NCBI RefSeq assembly: GCF_037042905.1
Contig: NC_087255.1
Location: 33,170,001-33,234,000 of the forward strand
Direction: 5' to 3'
Source: Lytechinus pictus
Taxonomy: Eukaryota
Length of the DNA stretch: 64,000 nt
Part shown: piece after piece, positions 16,744 through 21,859 of the stretch
How the letters are laid out: every line of letters begins with the position of its first letter
Numbering within the stretch: the first letter of the stretch is position 1
Program-made: the position numbers and the translations under genes
The notes under the pieces: generated by a model
Databases searched by the model: none
What the model saw: only the letters and a program-made list of their open reading frames with translations
Told to the model about the DNA's origin: nothing

Positions 16744-17844
16744 ATGGAGTTAATGACGTTAATAATTGAATACAAGGACATAAAAAGGCGCTGGAAAAAC
16801 AACTTTGACAGAACATTTATCAAAACTGATTAGATACTTAAATATCATAATTGTTTCTCTTTAATAAGGATCATTCTCTAACTCCTCTTGGGTAGGTGAT
16901 ATTAGTTTGTTTAATCAATCAAAATGAATTACTGCTACCAATATTATCATCATCATTGCTTATTGTTAATTCAGTTGTCCACAAAAGTGGTTCACAGGTG
17001 GTAGGCCTGAATTCTTTCTCACCCTCCCTCCCTCCCCCCTCTTTCTCTCTCTCTTTCCATGTTTCCTCATTTCTATCCCTCTCTCTCTCTCTTACCATCT
17101 TAATCGCCAGTTCATTGAACCATGAATCAATATTCTCAAGCTACACAGAAAGAAACAAATCAAATATTAGCAAGGCATTTGTCAACTTATTTTAATTTCC
17201 ATTTTAATATACTATATATACCCATACAGACATTAATCTTGTTATTCTGTAGTTACATTCTTTCTTTTCATTTAGCATCATAATAATGAATGGTTTATAA
17301 TGTGTTATTATGTGTTATGTGATATTAATAAATGATTAGCGTCTTTATAAAATTCATAATCGTTTTGATGGAGTATACGTGAAAGCGAAGGGGCTTTAAT
17401 ACTAAAAGTAATTCTTGTATAGGATGCAAGCTAGCCCCCGTGTTTTAGTGTCTAGTGCCGACCAAACTTATTTTTAGCGTACAAAATTCCAATTATGATG
17501 TTTGTACGAAGATATTTTTCCTTTTGTTAATAAAACATATCTGTCGAATATATGATCATTATTAGTTGTGAGCCTAGATATTGTGTTTCTTCTCGCAAAG
17601 TCCATCATGTTTACTTAAGATAATGTCTAATGATTTCACGTTAATAACTCATTAAGGTAATGACAGTTCATATACTATTATTTTTTACTCCATTTGTGTT
17701 GAATATACAAATTAAAAATATATAATTTCCTGCATTTTGCACTTGTTTGTGGATCTTTTTCAGATATCTTTGTTAACATTCTTATGTGAGAGTAGGATGA
17801 TTGAATAATGACAAGTGCTTTGTCAATTAAGAGGGACATACCAG

Positions 17845-18117
17845 GGTCCCGTCCAAAAAAGAGTTGTGATTGATCCGATCAACCTCAACTATATGGAAAT
17901 CCATCAATGTCATAATTTTTCTTACAGGAAATTTTGGCAATGTCCTTTTGTAAACAAAGAGGAGCGTATATACTGAGTTGTTAAGAACACGATGAATGTA
18001 TAAATATACACCATTATGTAAACATTTGAGCAAACATGCATATCATATGTTGACGTTGCTGGCTTTCCATAGTTGTGGTTGATCGGATCAGTCGCAACTC
18101 TTTGTAAGACGGGGCCA
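17845..18117. mobile_element. Palindromic Harbinger-like MITE family (related copy at about 57708-57978)
   Basis: Ends ggtcccgtc..aaagagttgtgattgatcc / ggatcagtcgcaactctttgtaagacggggcc. The copy in AMPK intron 3 has the same ends and a similar interior. Confidence 0.7.
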
Positions 18118-18500
18118 AGGGATATTCTGTATAGGGGTGAAATGTACTGCTTCAAAGTGTTCATTATGTTTGTGCGAACCTCAGAGCAGCCTAAAACCAG
18201 TTCTACTTTCGTAAATATGATATCTGCTTAAATCCTTAATCATGAAAATTAAAAAGCCGCCACGACGTAATGTTAATTCAAAGGTCACTCTAAAATTACC
18301 ATTAAAATTGATATTCGAAAGATACGTCATGTAGTATGATAAATGAGACTAAAATGTTTTCATACAATGGTAATATTTTTTGTGACGGAGCAAGCTTCCT
18401 ATTTTGAACATCTACAATTTATATTCTTCGGTAGAGAATATCAACCAAAACAAGATCAAGGTAGATCCTCCTTGTCATCAACAGACCTTGATAGGATTCT

Positions 18501-20729
18501 TCAAAGATTCTTGTATGCTTGTAGCATTTCGATTGCGTTCGGGAACAGTCTCAAATCTTGACATCTCGATCGCTCAAATGTGGGTCTAAAACTCGACCAG
18601 CTGGCAACAGCTAACCCATCTTGGGCCGTCTTAGCATGCTTTCCGTCGTAGAACCTTTGCCCACCTTCATCGTATATCCTGGTTATTTCTCCAAGATTCC
18701 AGACGTCGCCGGTGGAAGCCCCAAACTGGTATGTGCCTTGCTTGAACAACACTCTGGAACCAATACCAATCAGGTCTTCAGTGGGAGTGGTATTCATAGC
18801 CACAAGATCATAAGGCTGAGTTCTGCAACTGGGATCTGGATCGTCCCAGTCAACTGTATACTTCATACTAGACTTGTCAAAGTGTGCTACCACTGCTGGA
18901 TAGAACTGCCATTCAGCGTAATGAGCAATGACGGCATCTCCAACCATTGGGATAGATGCTCTCAGACTACTTTCACTTCCATCGTATGTTTGATCGAGGT
19001 CTGATGATGCGTCGTATCTTGGTGGTTCAGTGAGAACCGTTTCTTTCAAATGCTGACTGATCTTCTTGATGATGGAATCATAGCTATCGGTAGAGTTCGT
19101 GGTGTCCACGGTCATGACGTATGGCTGATGGTCTGTCGGTAGGACCATCCCAACGCTGCTGCCCTTCCATGCATCTCTATCCTCAACTATCCCTCGACCA
19201 ACCTCCAACACGATAGCACTCTTCTTAAGAGATCGTAGAGCGAAATTAGCTTCCATCTTACAATTCTGACTGTTGGTGTACTCCTTTGACACACACATGA
19301 CCACTATTGAACTTTGCTTTAGTCCGTCCGCGATTTGCCCGAACATACCAGAATCATCAACGCTGTTCAGTTGTTCAATATCAAGCCAGACCTTTTCTCC
19401 TATTTCCTTTTCAAGGTCTTGTTTGATTTTTCGGGGATCGGAAAATTCATGGCCAGAAAAGCCTCGGACCTGTCCAGCATCAAATGAAGATTTGGAATTG
19501 GTCCAGCAGTAAGACAGGAAAACCCGCGGGGGAATTTCTTCACCTTTGGATTTCTTATCCTTCAAGGCGTTCTTGGACTCATCAAAGACAAGTTTCTTTA
19601 AGTTGGCTTCAAGTTCTTCAGCCTTCTCTTGCCACACATCAGCACTCGCAAATTGTATGTACAGTTGTCCCGCAAGCAGCATACCAGCAGTTGTCTGAAG
19701 CCATTTATCACTTTTACCGATAACGACAGGGATTACAGTTTTCCCCAGTGTTTTCTTCGCGTACAGAAGCTCGGACATGGCTTGACTGTCCTCGATGAAG
19801 TTGTCACTGAGGCAAACTAGATAGATGGAAGCATTCTTGATGAGTTGTACAGCTGATTGAATATCAATTGCTAATTGACCGTGACTGGATTGCCGTATAT
19901 TATACTTGTCGCTAAACTTCCTTGTTATCCGCGTAACAGTCTCACCATCTTTAGCAACTTTCGAAATGAATACGTCGCATGATGCATCCTTGTTCTTATC
20001 CCCCGGTGTATCCGAATCCAAACAGTTGAAAATATTTGGAATAACCCTGAGTTGATCTATCCTGAGGTCAGTGAAAGTTAAGCTATATCCAACATAGTTG
20101 TTTTTGGAAACCTGCGGATCAGTGAAATCTACATGTTTCCCGTTGTAGCGAGGCTCACCGTTTGCATCCTTTGTGATGATTGTTATTCGGCCCATATGCC
20201 ATCGATCAGATATCTGGCTTAGTTTGGCAAGCTCCGATTTTTTAGCATCTGAGAGGGTCCTGCCAGTGCTGTCGCAGATGCTGCCATCACTATTCTTGCC
20301 ACAGTAATATAGGCCTTGCTTAAAGAGAACTTTTGTCCCGACTCCAACGGAAGATGAACTTGGTACCTTATCAACACACAAGTTATCATATCTTGCTGCT
20401 TCTGGTGCCCAATTTCCGTCCGTCCATCGAATCATGTAGCTTAGAGTGTCAGGTACCCAGCTCTCAATAGTAGCAGTGAACCAACCATTACCGTACCAAT
20501 GCACAAGAGCTCTGTCTCCAACTTTTGGAGTTTCATCAGCATCATCGGATTCGTTGGTCTCTGCCTTTTGAGACGGAACTTGCTTCTCTAAAGCACTTAT
20601 CAGCTGACCAAACGATTCGTTTGTTGATACCCCAAAAGCAATATCACTCAGTGATCCTGAAAACGAGTATTTTTCGCGTAAGATTTTCTCCAACTCTTCA
20701 ACGATCTTCGGGTCGACTTCTGCTCCCAT
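18501..20729 (-). CDS. Tandem-Tudor-like / TIR / TIR / tandem-Tudor-like protein, 742 aa, intronless CDS
   Basis: Uninterrupted 2.2-kb ORF. The ORF-track start at 20738 is GTG, the first ATG is at 20729 and there is an in-frame upstream stop near 20835. Internal duplicate modules PKVGDRALVHW..WF.A...Y.I.W.D...VG.KVLFKQG.Y...W..G.IT...Y.GKH...LR.IPN (about 20528-20019) and PMVGDAVIAHY..FYPA...YTVDWDD...IG.RVLFKQG.Y...W..G.IT...Y.GKH...LR.FPN (about 18950-18525). TIR1 DVFIS...LVCLSDNF...AMSELLYA...VIPV (about 19979-19587). TIR2 RVFLSYCW...VWLD...VVMCVSKEYTNSQNCKMEANFA (about 19526-19041). Confidence 0.9.
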   Translation of the reverse strand: MGAEVDPKIVEELEKILREKYSFSGSLSDIAFGVSTNESFGQLISALEKQVPSQKAETNESDDADETPKVGDRALVHWYGNGWFTATIESWVPDTLSYMIRWTDGNWAPEAARYDNLCVDKVPSSSSVGVGTKVLFKQGLYYCGKNSDGSICDSTGRTLSDAKKSELAKLSQISDRWHMGRITIITKDANGEPRYNGKHVDFTDPQVSKNNYVGYSLTFTDLRIDQLRVIPNIFNCLDSDTPGDKNKDASCDVFISKVAKDGETVTRITRKFSDKYNIRQSSHGQLAIDIQSAVQLIKNASIYLVCLSDNFIEDSQAMSELLYAKKTLGKTVIPVVIGKSDKWLQTTAGMLLAGQLYIQFASADVWQEKAEELEANLKKLVFDESKNALKDKKSKGEEIPPRVFLSYCWTNSKSSFDAGQVRGFSGHEFSDPRKIKQDLEKEIGEKVWLDIEQLNSVDDSGMFGQIADGLKQSSIVVMCVSKEYTNSQNCKMEANFALRSLKKSAIVLEVGRGIVEDRDAWKGSSVGMVLPTDHQPYVMTVDTTNSTDSYDSIIKKISQHLKETVLTEPPRYDASSDLDQTYDGSESSLRASIPMVGDAVIAHYAEWQFYPAVVAHFDKSSMKYTVDWDDPDPSCRTQPYDLVAMNTTPTEDLIGIGSRVLFKQGTYQFGASTGDVWNLGEITRIYDEGGQRFYDGKHAKTAQDGLAVASWSSFRPTFERSRCQDLRLFPNAIEMLQAYKNL

Positions 20730-20978
20730 CCTGAACACGGATTGTTGACAACTTTCAGTTGGTTTGTATTTAACGAGTTTTATGTTTATTAAATTATAGA
20801 ATTGGTGAAAACTAAAATGAATTGTTGCAAATGTTCAGGTTTACAATCAAATAATTACACAGATGACAGCTTGGCCGGATTCGACTGACTAAAACTGAAG
20901 ATGCATGGAGAAACGGATGAACAAAACTTCTTTTAATACAAGCTATCCCATGTGACACTCTAATATGGGTTCATCAAT

Positions 20979-21859
20979 CTGTAATGAAAAAGGGAAGAAA
21001 AATCATGAACATGATGAATAAAAGTGGAGTTCACTCGAACACTTCATTTCAATTCCTTGTTTTAAGCTCATTTTAGGGTCCTCTTGAATATGATTCAGTA
21101 TATTTTAAGCCCGTATTAAGAGCTATCTGTTCTTTCAGATGAATCACCAATTAAGTGTTTATCAGTTATAACATCCCAACTGCTGCCCTGACTAAAATGA
21201 GCCGGAAATAATCAATCTTGAAATTGGTGTACGTAGGCCTATTTGCTGACTCGATTCTCGAGGGAGGGGGGTGAATAGTGGCTCTTAAGAGTGTACTTAT
21301 TTTCAGTGGTGTACTGCATCAATATTCGGGGGGGGGGGGAGGCACCAAATTATTTTATTAGTAGTATTTTCTTGGTCGTGAAACTTTCGAATATGTAGTC
21401 CAGGACAGGCTGGCCAGCCCACACCCCATCTACACTCTAAAAAATGATTGGTAAATTTAACCAATCTGTTATTGTCTCACCGACAAAAATGATCAAAATC
21501 AACCTTGGTTAACTCTACCATAATTTTGGTTGATATTGGCCATCAGTCGGACAAATTCACCAATCAAAATATCGATTACTTTGACGTCCCTATTTAGAGG
21601 GTATATTAGTATATATTGCTTATTTTCGAGTGGGGTCGATAAATGTTACAAAATGATTGAATGACATCCGACGTTTGCGACGCGATGTCCGTCCCGTCTT
21701 CTTTCGGATATTTTGGTTAGACGTACTCGATCGGACAGTTCAATGTATCCTGTAAACCAACAATTACGCAGAATTATGGAAAGTCAAGAGAATGTAATAT
21801 AAATGCAATAAGAAATATTCATATTTTCACAATTCAATTAAAGTGTGAGTCATTCTTAC
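20979..21859 (-). other. Probable 5'-UTR intron of the Tudor-TIR gene
   Basis: Minus-strand donor cg|gtaagaatg at 21859 and acceptor tttcttccctttttcattacag at 20979, upstream of the in-frame stop and the ATG. Confidence 0.55.

What the first reader, a model, noticed from the sequence alone, without database searches (positions are those of the whole stretch)
18501..20729. Symmetric Tudor-Tudor/TIR/TIR/Tudor-Tudor protein: candidate methyl-mark-gated NADase immune sensor
Seen: two homologous ~150-aa modules flank two TIR folds, and there is no signal peptide, TM, LRR, SAM, ARM, death or NACHT region. The first half of each module (VHWYGNGWF...YMIRWTDG and IAHYAEWQFYPA...YTVDWDD) has the aromatic/Asp spacing of Tudor cages such as those of 53BP1 or SMN. 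Known: Tudor aromatic cages bind methyl-Lys or methyl-Arg, and SARM1-type, bacterial and plant TIRs hydrolyse NAD+ when clustered, unlike scaffold TLR/MyD88 TIRs. Inference: multivalent binding of methylated ligands (histones, Piwi or Sm tails, pathogen proteins) could cluster the TIRs and trigger NAD+ depletion or cyclic-ADPR signalling. I do not recognise this architecture from any characterised gene, though uncharacterised homologues may exist.
Basis: partly seen in the sequence, partly recalled or inferred. Interest (0 to 1): 0.9.

Follow-up and report, generated by a model that had tools for sequence, protein, structure and literature searches.

The report
Tandem-Tudor / twin-TIR protein family
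A sea-urchin gene encodes a soluble protein in which two TIR immune-signalling domains sit between two methyl-mark-reader-like tandem Tudor modules; the design is conserved from choanoflagellates to deuterostomes and I found no study of it, so it may link protein methylation to TIR signalling.

Summary
Window 20729..18501 (minus strand) is one coding exon for a 742-aa soluble protein. Its order is a short helical N-terminus, a tandem Tudor module, TIR1, TIR2 and a second tandem Tudor module.

- **Tudor modules.** They are homologous to each other (E 7e-20). The C-terminal one folds with high confidence (pLDDT 91.6) and matches the tandem Tudors of SETDB1, UHRF1, SGF29 and 53BP1. The canonical cage positions (W/Y, F/Y, W, D, Y) are conserved across 41 modules.
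- **TIRs.** They are paralogues (hhalign E 2.6e-31). Both keep the Glu that aligns with the catalytic Glu of plant SNC1 and bacterial Cat1. Both lack the ligand-binding Trp four residues upstream. Their folds match scaffold and enzymatic TIRs equally well.
- **Distribution.** Six choanoflagellates, corals, an anemone, hydrozoans, a tunicate and Lytechinus carry the family. The module almost always occurs with TIRs.
- **This genome.** It holds two intact paralogues (dN/dS 0.195).
- **Literature.** Nothing on this architecture was found.

The mechanism (methyl-ligand binding clusters the TIRs, which then consume NAD+ or signal) is plausible but untested. A non-enzymatic adaptor remains a serious rival.

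The parts
18501..20729 (-). Complete CDS (742 codons plus stop at 18501-18503) in a single coding exon
   Evidence: ORF list. ATG at 20729-20727. 94% identical to Lytechinus variegatus LOC121423874 over its full length.
20553..20729 (-). N-terminal segment of about 60 aa with two helices, acidic (pI 4.4)
   Evidence: AF2 helices at residues 10-24 and 39-53. Conserved within subfamily A. pI.
20004..20543 (-). N-terminal tandem Tudor module (ORF residues 66-245). Tudor-1 cage candidates are W81, F87, W105, D107 and Y117. Tudor-2 carries a subfamily-specific insert of about 26 aa that forms a helix.
   Evidence: Homology to the C-module. Cage columns. Secondary structure. Codons checked.
19554..19991 (-). 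TIR1 (ORF residues 250-395). Glu E323 (codon 19770-19772) is at the catalytic position and Gln319 is at the Trp(-4) position. It lacks the box-1 aromatic and the AA-loop insert.
   Evidence: Pfam. Profile against PDB (Cat1 E 3.2e-7, SNC1, MyD88). Motifs. VIA Z 13.8-15.5 to solved TIRs.
19014..19553 (-). TIR2 (ORF residues 396-575), the canonical TIR_2 match. Glu E496 (codon 19251-19253) is at the catalytic position and Asn492 is at the Trp(-4) position. It has an invariant SYCWxNS box and a conserved AA-loop insert (..FSDPRxIK).
   Evidence: VIA Z 13.3-14.5 to TIRAP/MAL, 11.4 to SfSTING TIR and 9.9 to TIR-SAVED.
18504..18965 (-). C-terminal tandem Tudor module (ORF residues 592-745). Tudor-1 cage candidates are Y607, Y613, W631, D633, D635 and Y643. 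Tudor-2 has family-wide invariant residues including Q667 and H701. A C-terminal helix follows.
   Evidence: AF2 pLDDT 91.6. Foldseek and VIA matches. Conservation.
20730..20979 (-). 5' UTR portion of the coding exon. An AG acceptor lies at 20980-20979, preceded by a T-rich tract.
   Evidence: Sequence. Contigs of runs X1 and X15 cover about 18276-20979 and stop there. One X1 contig continues 17 nt into sequence that is not contiguous in the genome.

Best explanation
The gene encodes a soluble sensor-effector protein of an old choanozoan family.

**Sensor (inferred).** Each flanking tandem Tudor module presents a conserved aromatic cage in its first barrel: W/Y, F/Y, W, Asp and Tyr. This cage most likely binds a methylated Lys or Arg on a basic peptide. 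The second barrel has a second, even more conserved surface (F-x-Q-G-x-Y, G-x-H-x-K).

**Output (inferred).** The central pair of paralogous TIR domains is the output. Bivalent binding to a multivalent or clustered methylated ligand would bring TIR pairs from several molecules together. Alternatively it would release an intramolecular autoinhibited TIR1-TIR2 arrangement. Either event would create the TIR-TIR interfaces that switch TIR domains on. TIR2 is the better conserved domain and is the likelier catalytic or nucleating unit. TIR1 is the more degenerate domain and is the likelier partner.

**What the output is (my preferred reading).** Cleavage of NAD+ or a related nucleotide through the conserved Glu (E496, possibly E323), in an atypical pocket that lacks the usual Trp.

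**Shown here:** the architecture, the folds, the internal duplications, residue conservation, purifying selection and the phyletic range.

**Inferred only:** ligand class, clustering, catalysis and an immune role.
For: - **Architecture and folds.**
- **Cage conservation over 41 modules.**
  - Position a is W in 17/17 N-modules and Y, H or W in C-modules.
  - Position b is F or Y in 41/41.
  - Position c is W in 39/41.
  - Position d is D in 40/41.
  - The beta4 position is Tyr in 37/41.
- **Cage mapping.** Positions a-c fall on the columns of KDM4A W967, Y973 and F932 in the HMMER alignment printed. The cage role of those KDM4A residues is from published knowledge, not from a tool.
- **Charge.** The Tudor modules are acidic (pI 5.3-5.6). 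This favours basic peptide ligands over nucleic acid.
- **TIR duplication.** TIR1 and TIR2 are paralogues with E323 aligned to E496 (hhalign 99.9%, E 2.6e-31).
- **Catalytic-position Glu.** It aligns with the CLNEL Glu of plant SNC1 and the WDEL Glu of the NADase Cat1. It is kept in at least 90% of 25 full-length homologues in both TIRs.
- **Nearest relatives.** The closest solved protein by sequence for both TIRs is the bacterial NADase Cat1. Language-model neighbours of TIR2 are bacterial TIR_2/ThsB-like clusters (a lead only).
- **Linkage of module and TIR.** Nine of ten atypical hits still carry TIR_2.
- **Not MyD88-dependent in origin.** The family occurs in choanoflagellates, which lack MyD88 and IRAK (PMC6040629).
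- **Selection.** The two paralogues in this genome give dN/dS 0.195. The values are 0.10 for the C-terminal Tudor module and 0.15 for TIR2.
Against: - No assay exists.
- The Trp four residues before the Glu binds ligand in SARM1 (PMC7075850). Here it is Asn in TIR2, nearly invariant, and Gln or Glu in TIR1.
- From my own knowledge, many non-enzymatic TLR TIRs also carry a Glu at the catalytic position.
- The best structural matches are scaffold TIRs: TRR-2 at Z 15.5, MyD88 at 15.0 and TIRAP at 14.5. They lead RPS4 and SARM1 by only 1-2 Z units, so the result is effectively a tie.
- In C-modules of subfamily B the first cage position is often His.
- The self-association test of the TIR pair gave no answer.
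- Two raw RNA-seq runs showed no reads on the gene, with about 6% of each run read.
Confidence: 0.45

Rival explanations
1. The protein is a non-enzymatic TIR adaptor or scaffold. The twin TIRs only nucleate or bridge TIR-TIR assemblies, as TIRAP, TRAM or MyD88 TIR filaments do. The Tudor modules recruit methylated partner proteins into that signalling complex.
For: - The top structural matches of TIR1 are Hydra TRR-2, MyD88 and IL-1RAcPb. Those of TIR2 are TIRAP/MAL filaments.
- The ligand-binding Trp(-4) is absent from both TIRs (PMC7075850).
- Among metazoan TIRs only SARM1 had known NADase activity as of 2020 (PMC7075850).
- Sea urchins have very large TLR repertoires that need adaptors (my own knowledge).
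Against: - The family predates MyD88 and IRAK and is present in choanoflagellates.
- The Glu is conserved in both TIRs across about 25 homologues.
- No death, kinase or other relay domain is present.
- The nearest solved sequence relative is an NADase.
Confidence: 0.3
2. The protein is a TIR effector, but the Tudor modules are not methyl readers. They would bind another ligand (an unmodified peptide motif, a small cation or a nucleotide) through the invariant Tudor-2 surface. Or they would serve mainly as intramolecular clamps that autoinhibit the TIR pair.
For: - Every column invariant across all 41 modules lies in Tudor-2: F74, Q76, G77, G92, G108, H110, F130, R139 and P142 in A3 numbering. 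None lies in the Tudor-1 cage.
- Lys is conserved two residues after the invariant His in all C-modules.
- The symmetric flanking arrangement would suit a clamp.
Against: - The Tudor-1 cage positions are nevertheless 90-100% conserved in type.
- The modules are acidic, which disfavours nucleotide or nucleic-acid binding.
- All structural neighbours are histone-mark readers.
Confidence: 0.15
3. The protein is a chromatin or DNA-damage-response factor rather than an immune protein. A 53BP1/Crb2-like tandem Tudor would read histone methylation, and the TIRs would act as oligomerisation modules in the nucleus.
For: - The Pfam hits are to the Crb2 (Tudor_3), 53-BP1_Tudor, SETDB1 (Tudor_5) and KDM4A types.
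- The structural neighbours are all chromatin readers.
Against: - No basic NLS-like cluster was found by a simple scan.
- Several homologues, including the paralogue in this genome, begin with MG followed by a Ser at position 6. That is a myristoylation-like N-terminus, which points to membranes rather than the nucleus.
- No BRCT or other DNA-repair domain is present.
Confidence: 0.1

Closest known systems
SARM1 / C. elegans TIR-1 (ARM-SAM-SAM-TIR NADase)
   Same: It is a soluble animal and choanoflagellate TIR protein with a regulatory domain or domains. A Glu sits at the catalytic position. The TIR fold matches at Z 13.7-13.8.
   Different: - There are no ARM or SAM domains.
- There are two TIRs instead of one.
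- The Trp at -4 is replaced.
- The sensor domains are tandem Tudors.
- It is not an orthologue.
Bacterial sensor-TIR effectors (Cat1 CARF-TIR, TIR-SAVED, TIR-STING, ThsB)
   Same: The logic is the same: a ligand-binding domain fused to a TIR that is activated by oligomerisation. Cat1 is the best PDB sequence match for both TIRs. The matches to ThsB models are weak.
   Different: - The sensors there bind cyclic nucleotides.
- Here the flanking domains are eukaryotic-type royal-family barrels.
- The E-values are modest, so direct kinship is not established.
Tandem Tudor readers: SETDB1 TTD, UHRF1 TTD, SGF29, 53BP1/Crb2, KDM4A
   Same: The module has the same two-barrel fold: Z 11.7 to SETDB1 and 8.0-8.4 to UHRF1 and SGF29, and Foldseek probability 1.0 to 53BP1. 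Aromatic and Asp residues sit at the cage columns.
   Different: - Sequence identity is only 13-18%.
- The module carries its own invariant Tudor-2 motif set and a C-terminal helix.
- The module is fused to TIRs, not to chromatin enzymes.
Mollusc Toll receptors with tandem TIRs (PMC4929906)
   Same: Two TIR domains lie in one polypeptide in an invertebrate.
   Different: Those are transmembrane LRR receptors with C-terminal TIRs. This protein is soluble and is flanked by Tudor modules.
Uncharacterised eukaryotic TIR clades 3 and 9-13 of the 2026 TIR atlas (PMC13142454)
   Same: These are divergent TIRs, common in non-model animals, that nobody has studied. This family probably belongs among them.
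   Different: I could not place the TIRs in that tree. The paper does not mention Tudor fusions.

Membership tests
TIR domain (Pfam STIR clan) | Significant match to the TIR or TIR_2 profile above the curated cut-off | tested here: met
   TIR_2 scores 67.9 bits against a cut-off of 28, in two stretches. TIR scores 29.5 bits against 21.3.
TIR domain (Pfam STIR clan) | Flavodoxin-like TIR fold for both copies | tested here: met
   TIR1 (residues 251-388) gives Z 13.8-15.5 to TRR-2, MyD88, RPS4 and SARM1. TIR2 (residues 397-572) gives Z 13.3-14.5 to TIRAP/MAL.
NADase-type TIR (SARM1, plant TNL, bacterial TIR) | Catalytic Glu on helix alphaC | tested here: met
   E323 and E496 align with the Glu of SNC1 CLNEL and of Cat1 WDEL. 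Both are at least 90% conserved.
NADase-type TIR (SARM1, plant TNL, bacterial TIR) | Ligand-binding Trp four residues before the Glu (W-x-x-x-E) | tested here: not met
   TIR2 has Asn492, nearly invariant. TIR1 has Gln319, or Glu, Gln, Ile or Lys in subfamily B. The role of the Trp is taken from PMC7075850.
NADase-type TIR (SARM1, plant TNL, bacterial TIR) | NAD+ cleavage that depends on the Glu and on oligomerisation | not testable with these tools
   This needs biochemistry. The self-association prediction gave no answer.
Royal-family tandem Tudor domain | Two SH3-like five-stranded barrels in tandem | tested here: met
   The AF2 model has pLDDT 91.6. VIA gives Z 11.7 to SETDB1, 10.8 to fly SETDB1 and 8.0-8.4 to UHRF1, SGF29 and SAWADEE. 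Foldseek finds 48 hits at E<=1e-3, and all 50 rows listed are tandem Tudors.
Royal-family tandem Tudor domain | Aromatic cage of three to four aromatic residues with or without an acidic residue at the canonical positions | tested here: met
   This is met at the sequence level only. The residues are W81, F87, W105, D107 and Y117 in the N-module and Y607, Y613, W631, D633 and Y643 in the C-module. The columns are conserved in 37-41 of 41 modules and map onto the KDM4A cage columns. The 3-D geometry was not inspected.
Royal-family tandem Tudor domain | Methyl-lysine or methyl-arginine binding | not testable with these tools
   This needs peptide arrays, ITC or NMR.
SARM1 orthologue | ARM - SAM - SAM - TIR architecture | tested here: not met
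   No ARM or SAM hit appears in Pfam even at E<=1.
MyD88-type TLR adaptor | Death domain plus a single TIR | tested here: not met
   There is no death domain. The family is present in choanoflagellates, which lack MyD88.

The most novel reading that the evidence does not exclude
This would be a second NAD+- or nucleotide-processing TIR enzyme lineage of animals and choanoflagellates, independent of SARM1. Its activity would be gated by reading protein methylation through two tandem Tudor modules. Methylation state of host or pathogen proteins, for example histone, Sm/Piwi-type or viral proteins, would then be coupled directly to NAD+ depletion or TIR-derived second messengers. The active-site pocket would be atypical, with an Asn in place of the usual Trp and a family-specific conserved AA-loop insert.
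Probability: 0.25. Interest if true: 0.85.

Novelty: new variant of a known kind. Interest (0 to 1): 0.6.

Why it matters
TIR proteins are the most widely shared immune module of life. In animals, as of a 2020 survey, only SARM1 was a known enzyme (PMC7075850). A 2026 survey reports several uncharacterised eukaryotic TIR clades, some of them common in non-model animals (PMC13142454).

This family offers a concrete, testable case. The predicted sensor is a methyl-mark reader, an input class I did not find described for any TIR effector. The family is old, because it is shared with choanoflagellates. It is under strong constraint. It is present in tractable systems: Lytechinus embryos, Clytia, Hydra and Salpingoeca rosetta. 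If it is enzymatic, it would link protein methylation to NAD+ signalling. If it is not, it would define a new adaptor type that predates MyD88.

Tried and rejected
- **Self-association.** Complex prediction on two copies of the TIR1-TIR2 unit returned 'no answer' (score 0.00). This is not evidence either way.
- **Single-sequence PDB search.** phmmer of the whole protein against PDB found nothing. Profiles were needed.
- **Foldseek on the full-length model.** It returned mostly Tudor hits and spurious long alignments and did not resolve the TIR type.
- **PADLOC and NCBIfam.** They gave only weak, sub-threshold TIR-like hits to ThsB, Argonaute-associated TIR and FxsC.
- **Word-based search with the C-module region.** It found only close relatives.
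- **Literature.** Seven searches for Tudor plus TIR, or for accession names, found nothing relevant. The Gerdol et al. 2017 classification of invertebrate TIR proteins (the ecTIR-DC families) is not held. I cannot exclude that it lists this family under a number.
- **Horizontal transfer.** I considered it as an explanation for the 59% identity between urchin and Clytia. I did not adopt it. The tree shows a slowly evolving subfamily A on a long stem, and cnidarians hold both subfamilies. That fits an old duplication with differential loss.
- **SARM1 orthology.** Rejected because no ARM or SAM domains are present.
- **Transmembrane receptor.** Rejected because no hydrophobic segment is present.
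- **Cage geometry.** Model coordinates and PAE were not available to scripts. Cage geometry and inter-domain contacts could not be measured.
Full report
**1. What is in the sequence.**

Residue numbers follow the 745-aa ORF listing; subtract 3 for numbering from the real ATG.

- The window is AT-rich (33-43% GC) and poor in ORFs, so it looks eukaryotic.
- Its only long ORF is 18501..20738 on the minus strand.
- The listing begins at a GTG. The first ATG is at 20729-20727.
- The protein is 82.8 kDa with pI 5.16. It has no hydrophobic segment; the maximum Kyte-Doolittle 19-residue mean is 1.12.
- It is 94% identical to an uncharacterised Lytechinus variegatus protein.
- A second intact, intronless paralogue of 793 aa lies on another contig of the same genome. 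It shares 79% identity with the window's protein. By my reading of the translation it closely matches the Lytechinus pictus entry.
- dN/dS between the two copies is 0.195. By region it is 0.10 for the C-terminal Tudor module, 0.15 for TIR2, 0.21 for the N-terminal Tudor module and 0.26 for TIR1. Both genes are under purifying selection.

**2. Transcription.**

- Contigs of two small public runs of the same species cover about 18276-20979.
- They stop at an AG acceptor (20980-20979) that follows a T-rich tract.
- One contig carries 17 further letters that are not contiguous in the genome.
- This looks like a spliced mRNA with the whole CDS in one exon. However, those runs are only guessed to be RNA.
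- Two raw RNA-seq runs showed no reads on the gene, with about 6% of each run read.
- The expression evidence is therefore modest.

**3. Domain anatomy.**

- Pfam finds TIR_2 (E 1.5e-18, two stretches) and TIR.
- Profiles of each TIR, built from 25 homologues, match each other (hhalign 99.9%, E 2.6e-31). The pair is an internal duplication.
- In a full-length AF2 model (pLDDT 78, pTM 0.54), TIR1 (residues 251-388) matches solved TIRs:
  - Z 15.5 to Hydra TRR-2
  - Z 15.0 to MyD88
  - Z 14.3 to RPS4
  - Z 13.8 to SARM1 and to RPP1
- TIR2 (residues 397-572) matches TIRAP/MAL at Z 13.3-14.5.
- The two flanking modules (residues 66-245 and 592-745) are homologous (E 7e-20).
- A profile of 41 modules hits the Tudors of KDM4A, PHF20/PHF20L1, TDRD3, LBR and PHF19 in PDB. 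27 of 41 modules hit Pfam Tudor_3.
- The C-module model is confident (pLDDT 91.6) and is a two-barrel tandem Tudor. VIA gives Z 11.7 to SETDB1, 10.8 to fly SETDB1, and 8.0-8.4 to UHRF1 TTD, SGF29 and SAWADEE. Foldseek gives probability 1.0 to 53BP1, SETDB1 and UHRF1.
- A short two-helix acidic N-terminal segment (residues 1-62) is an additional element.

**4. Cage residues.**

- The HMMER alignment to KDM4A places three module columns on KDM4A W967, Y973 and F932. Those residues form that protein's methyl-lysine cage (published knowledge).
- Across 41 modules:

| Cage position | N-modules | C-modules / all modules |
|---|---|---|
| a | W in 17/17 | Y, H or W in C-modules |
| b | | F or Y in 41/41 |
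| c | | W in 39/41 |
| d (Asp two residues after c) | | 40/41 |
| e (a second acidic or amide residue two further on) | | D or N |
| beta4 Tyr | | 37/41 |

- In this protein the residues are W81, F87, W105, D107 and Y117, and Y607, Y613, W631, D633 and Y643.
- An Asp inside the cage is typical of readers of lower methylation states, such as 53BP1 (my own knowledge).
- The modules are acidic, which fits basic peptide ligands.
- I could not inspect cage geometry because coordinates are not exposed.
- All columns invariant in every module lie in the second barrel: F-x-Q-G-x-Y, G-x-H and R..P. This marks a second functional surface of unknown role.

**5. Enzyme or scaffold?**

- Both TIRs keep a Glu at the position that aligns with the catalytic Glu of plant SNC1 and of the CRISPR-associated NADase Cat1.
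- That Glu is kept in nearly all homologues. The exception is the S. rosetta model, which has Gln in TIR1 and a deletion in TIR2.
- Cat1 is the best PDB sequence match for both TIRs.
- Against this, the Trp four residues upstream binds ligand in SARM1 (PMC7075850). Here it is Asn in TIR2 and Gln or Glu in TIR1.
- TIR2 instead has an invariant SYCWxNS box and a conserved insert of about 20 residues in the AA loop. Subfamily-A TIR1 has lost that insert and the box-1 aromatic, so the pair is asymmetric.
- The structural matches do not separate scaffold from enzymatic TIRs.
- A dimer prediction gave no answer.
- I therefore hold the NADase reading as the most likely single option, but well short of established.

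**6. Distribution.**

- A profile search of 1.84 billion representatives found 81 proteins at E<=1e-30 and 313 at E<=1e-10.
- Named members come from:
  - Choanoflagellates: Monosiga brevicollis, Salpingoeca rosetta, S. infusionum, S. macrocollata, S. helianthica and Didymoeca costata.
  - Cnidarians: Stylophora, Actinia, Hydra and Clytia.
  - A tunicate: Clavelina.
  - Echinoderms: Lytechinus.
- The same architecture is the top AlphaFold-DB cluster hit (E 1.9e-61). Its automatic name is a 'pats1 kinase' label, although the aligned span shows no kinase-like region.
- Nine of ten atypical hits still carry TIR_2. Variants add EF-hands, Di19-type zinc fingers or extra modules. One has four modules and no TIR.
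- A maximum-likelihood tree shows two subfamilies:
  - Subfamily A (urchin, Clytia and unnamed sequences) sits on a long stem with short tips.
  - Subfamily B holds other animals and all the choanoflagellates.
- The urchin genome has only A-type genes.
- Choanoflagellates lack MyD88 and IRAK (PMC6040629). The ancestral role therefore cannot have been MyD88-dependent.
- That paper lists Ank, Arm and SH2 as TIR partners but not Tudor. A possible reason is that the Pfam Tudor hits are often sub-threshold.

**7. Comparison and novelty.**

- The logic resembles bacterial sensor-TIR effectors and SARM1. The protein is not a member of either.
- It has no ARM or SAM domains and no cyclic-nucleotide sensor. 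One active-site hallmark is not met.
- I found no paper on a Tudor-TIR protein.
- A 2026 atlas states that several eukaryotic TIR clades common in non-model animals are uncharacterised (PMC13142454).
- I rate this a new variant of a known kind: a TIR effector or adaptor with a new class of input domain.
- Confidence by claim:

| Claim | Confidence |
|---|---|
| Architecture | About 0.95 |
| Methyl-ligand reading | About 0.6 |
| Catalytic TIR output | About 0.5 |
| The combined mechanism as stated | About 0.45 |

Noticed in passing
window 17838-18123: A MITE-like element of about 286 bp lies just downstream of the gene. Its 55-nt terminal inverted repeats are 82% complementary. In transcriptome-like contigs the summed depth reaches about 36,800, and many reads show 'opposite strands' joints.
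   Followed up: partly
L002:1210-3591 (G000:C20:17390334-17392715): This is an intact intronless paralogue of 793 aa. It has a K/S/Q-rich low-complexity insert of about 50 aa after the N-terminal helices. Its N-terminus, MGNKVS, fits the N-myristoylation pattern. The window copy begins MGAEVD, which fits less well.
   Followed up: partly
P0014 (817 aa, ENA metagenome contig of 214 kb): This relative has four tandem-Tudor modules and no TIR domain. It is the top hit of the module profile.
   Followed up: no
P0045, P0022, P0024, P0030: These family members carry extra N-terminal domains. P0045 has an EF-hand pair. P0022, P0024 and Hydra P0030 have Di19-type zinc fingers. S. rosetta and Clavelina have coiled-coil-like N-termini.
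   Followed up: no
AlphaFold DB cluster hits A0A7D9D6V2 and A0A210QEP3: These family members are automatically named 'serine/threonine kinase pats1'. A0A7D9D6V2 aligns to this protein over nearly its whole length, and that span shows nothing kinase-like.
   Followed up: no
L004:6001-8238: Subfamily-A homologue P0007 is also a single uninterrupted ORF, on a 2.4-Mb eukaryote-like contig of a metagenome assembly. Intronless coding regions may be a feature of the subfamily.
   Followed up: no
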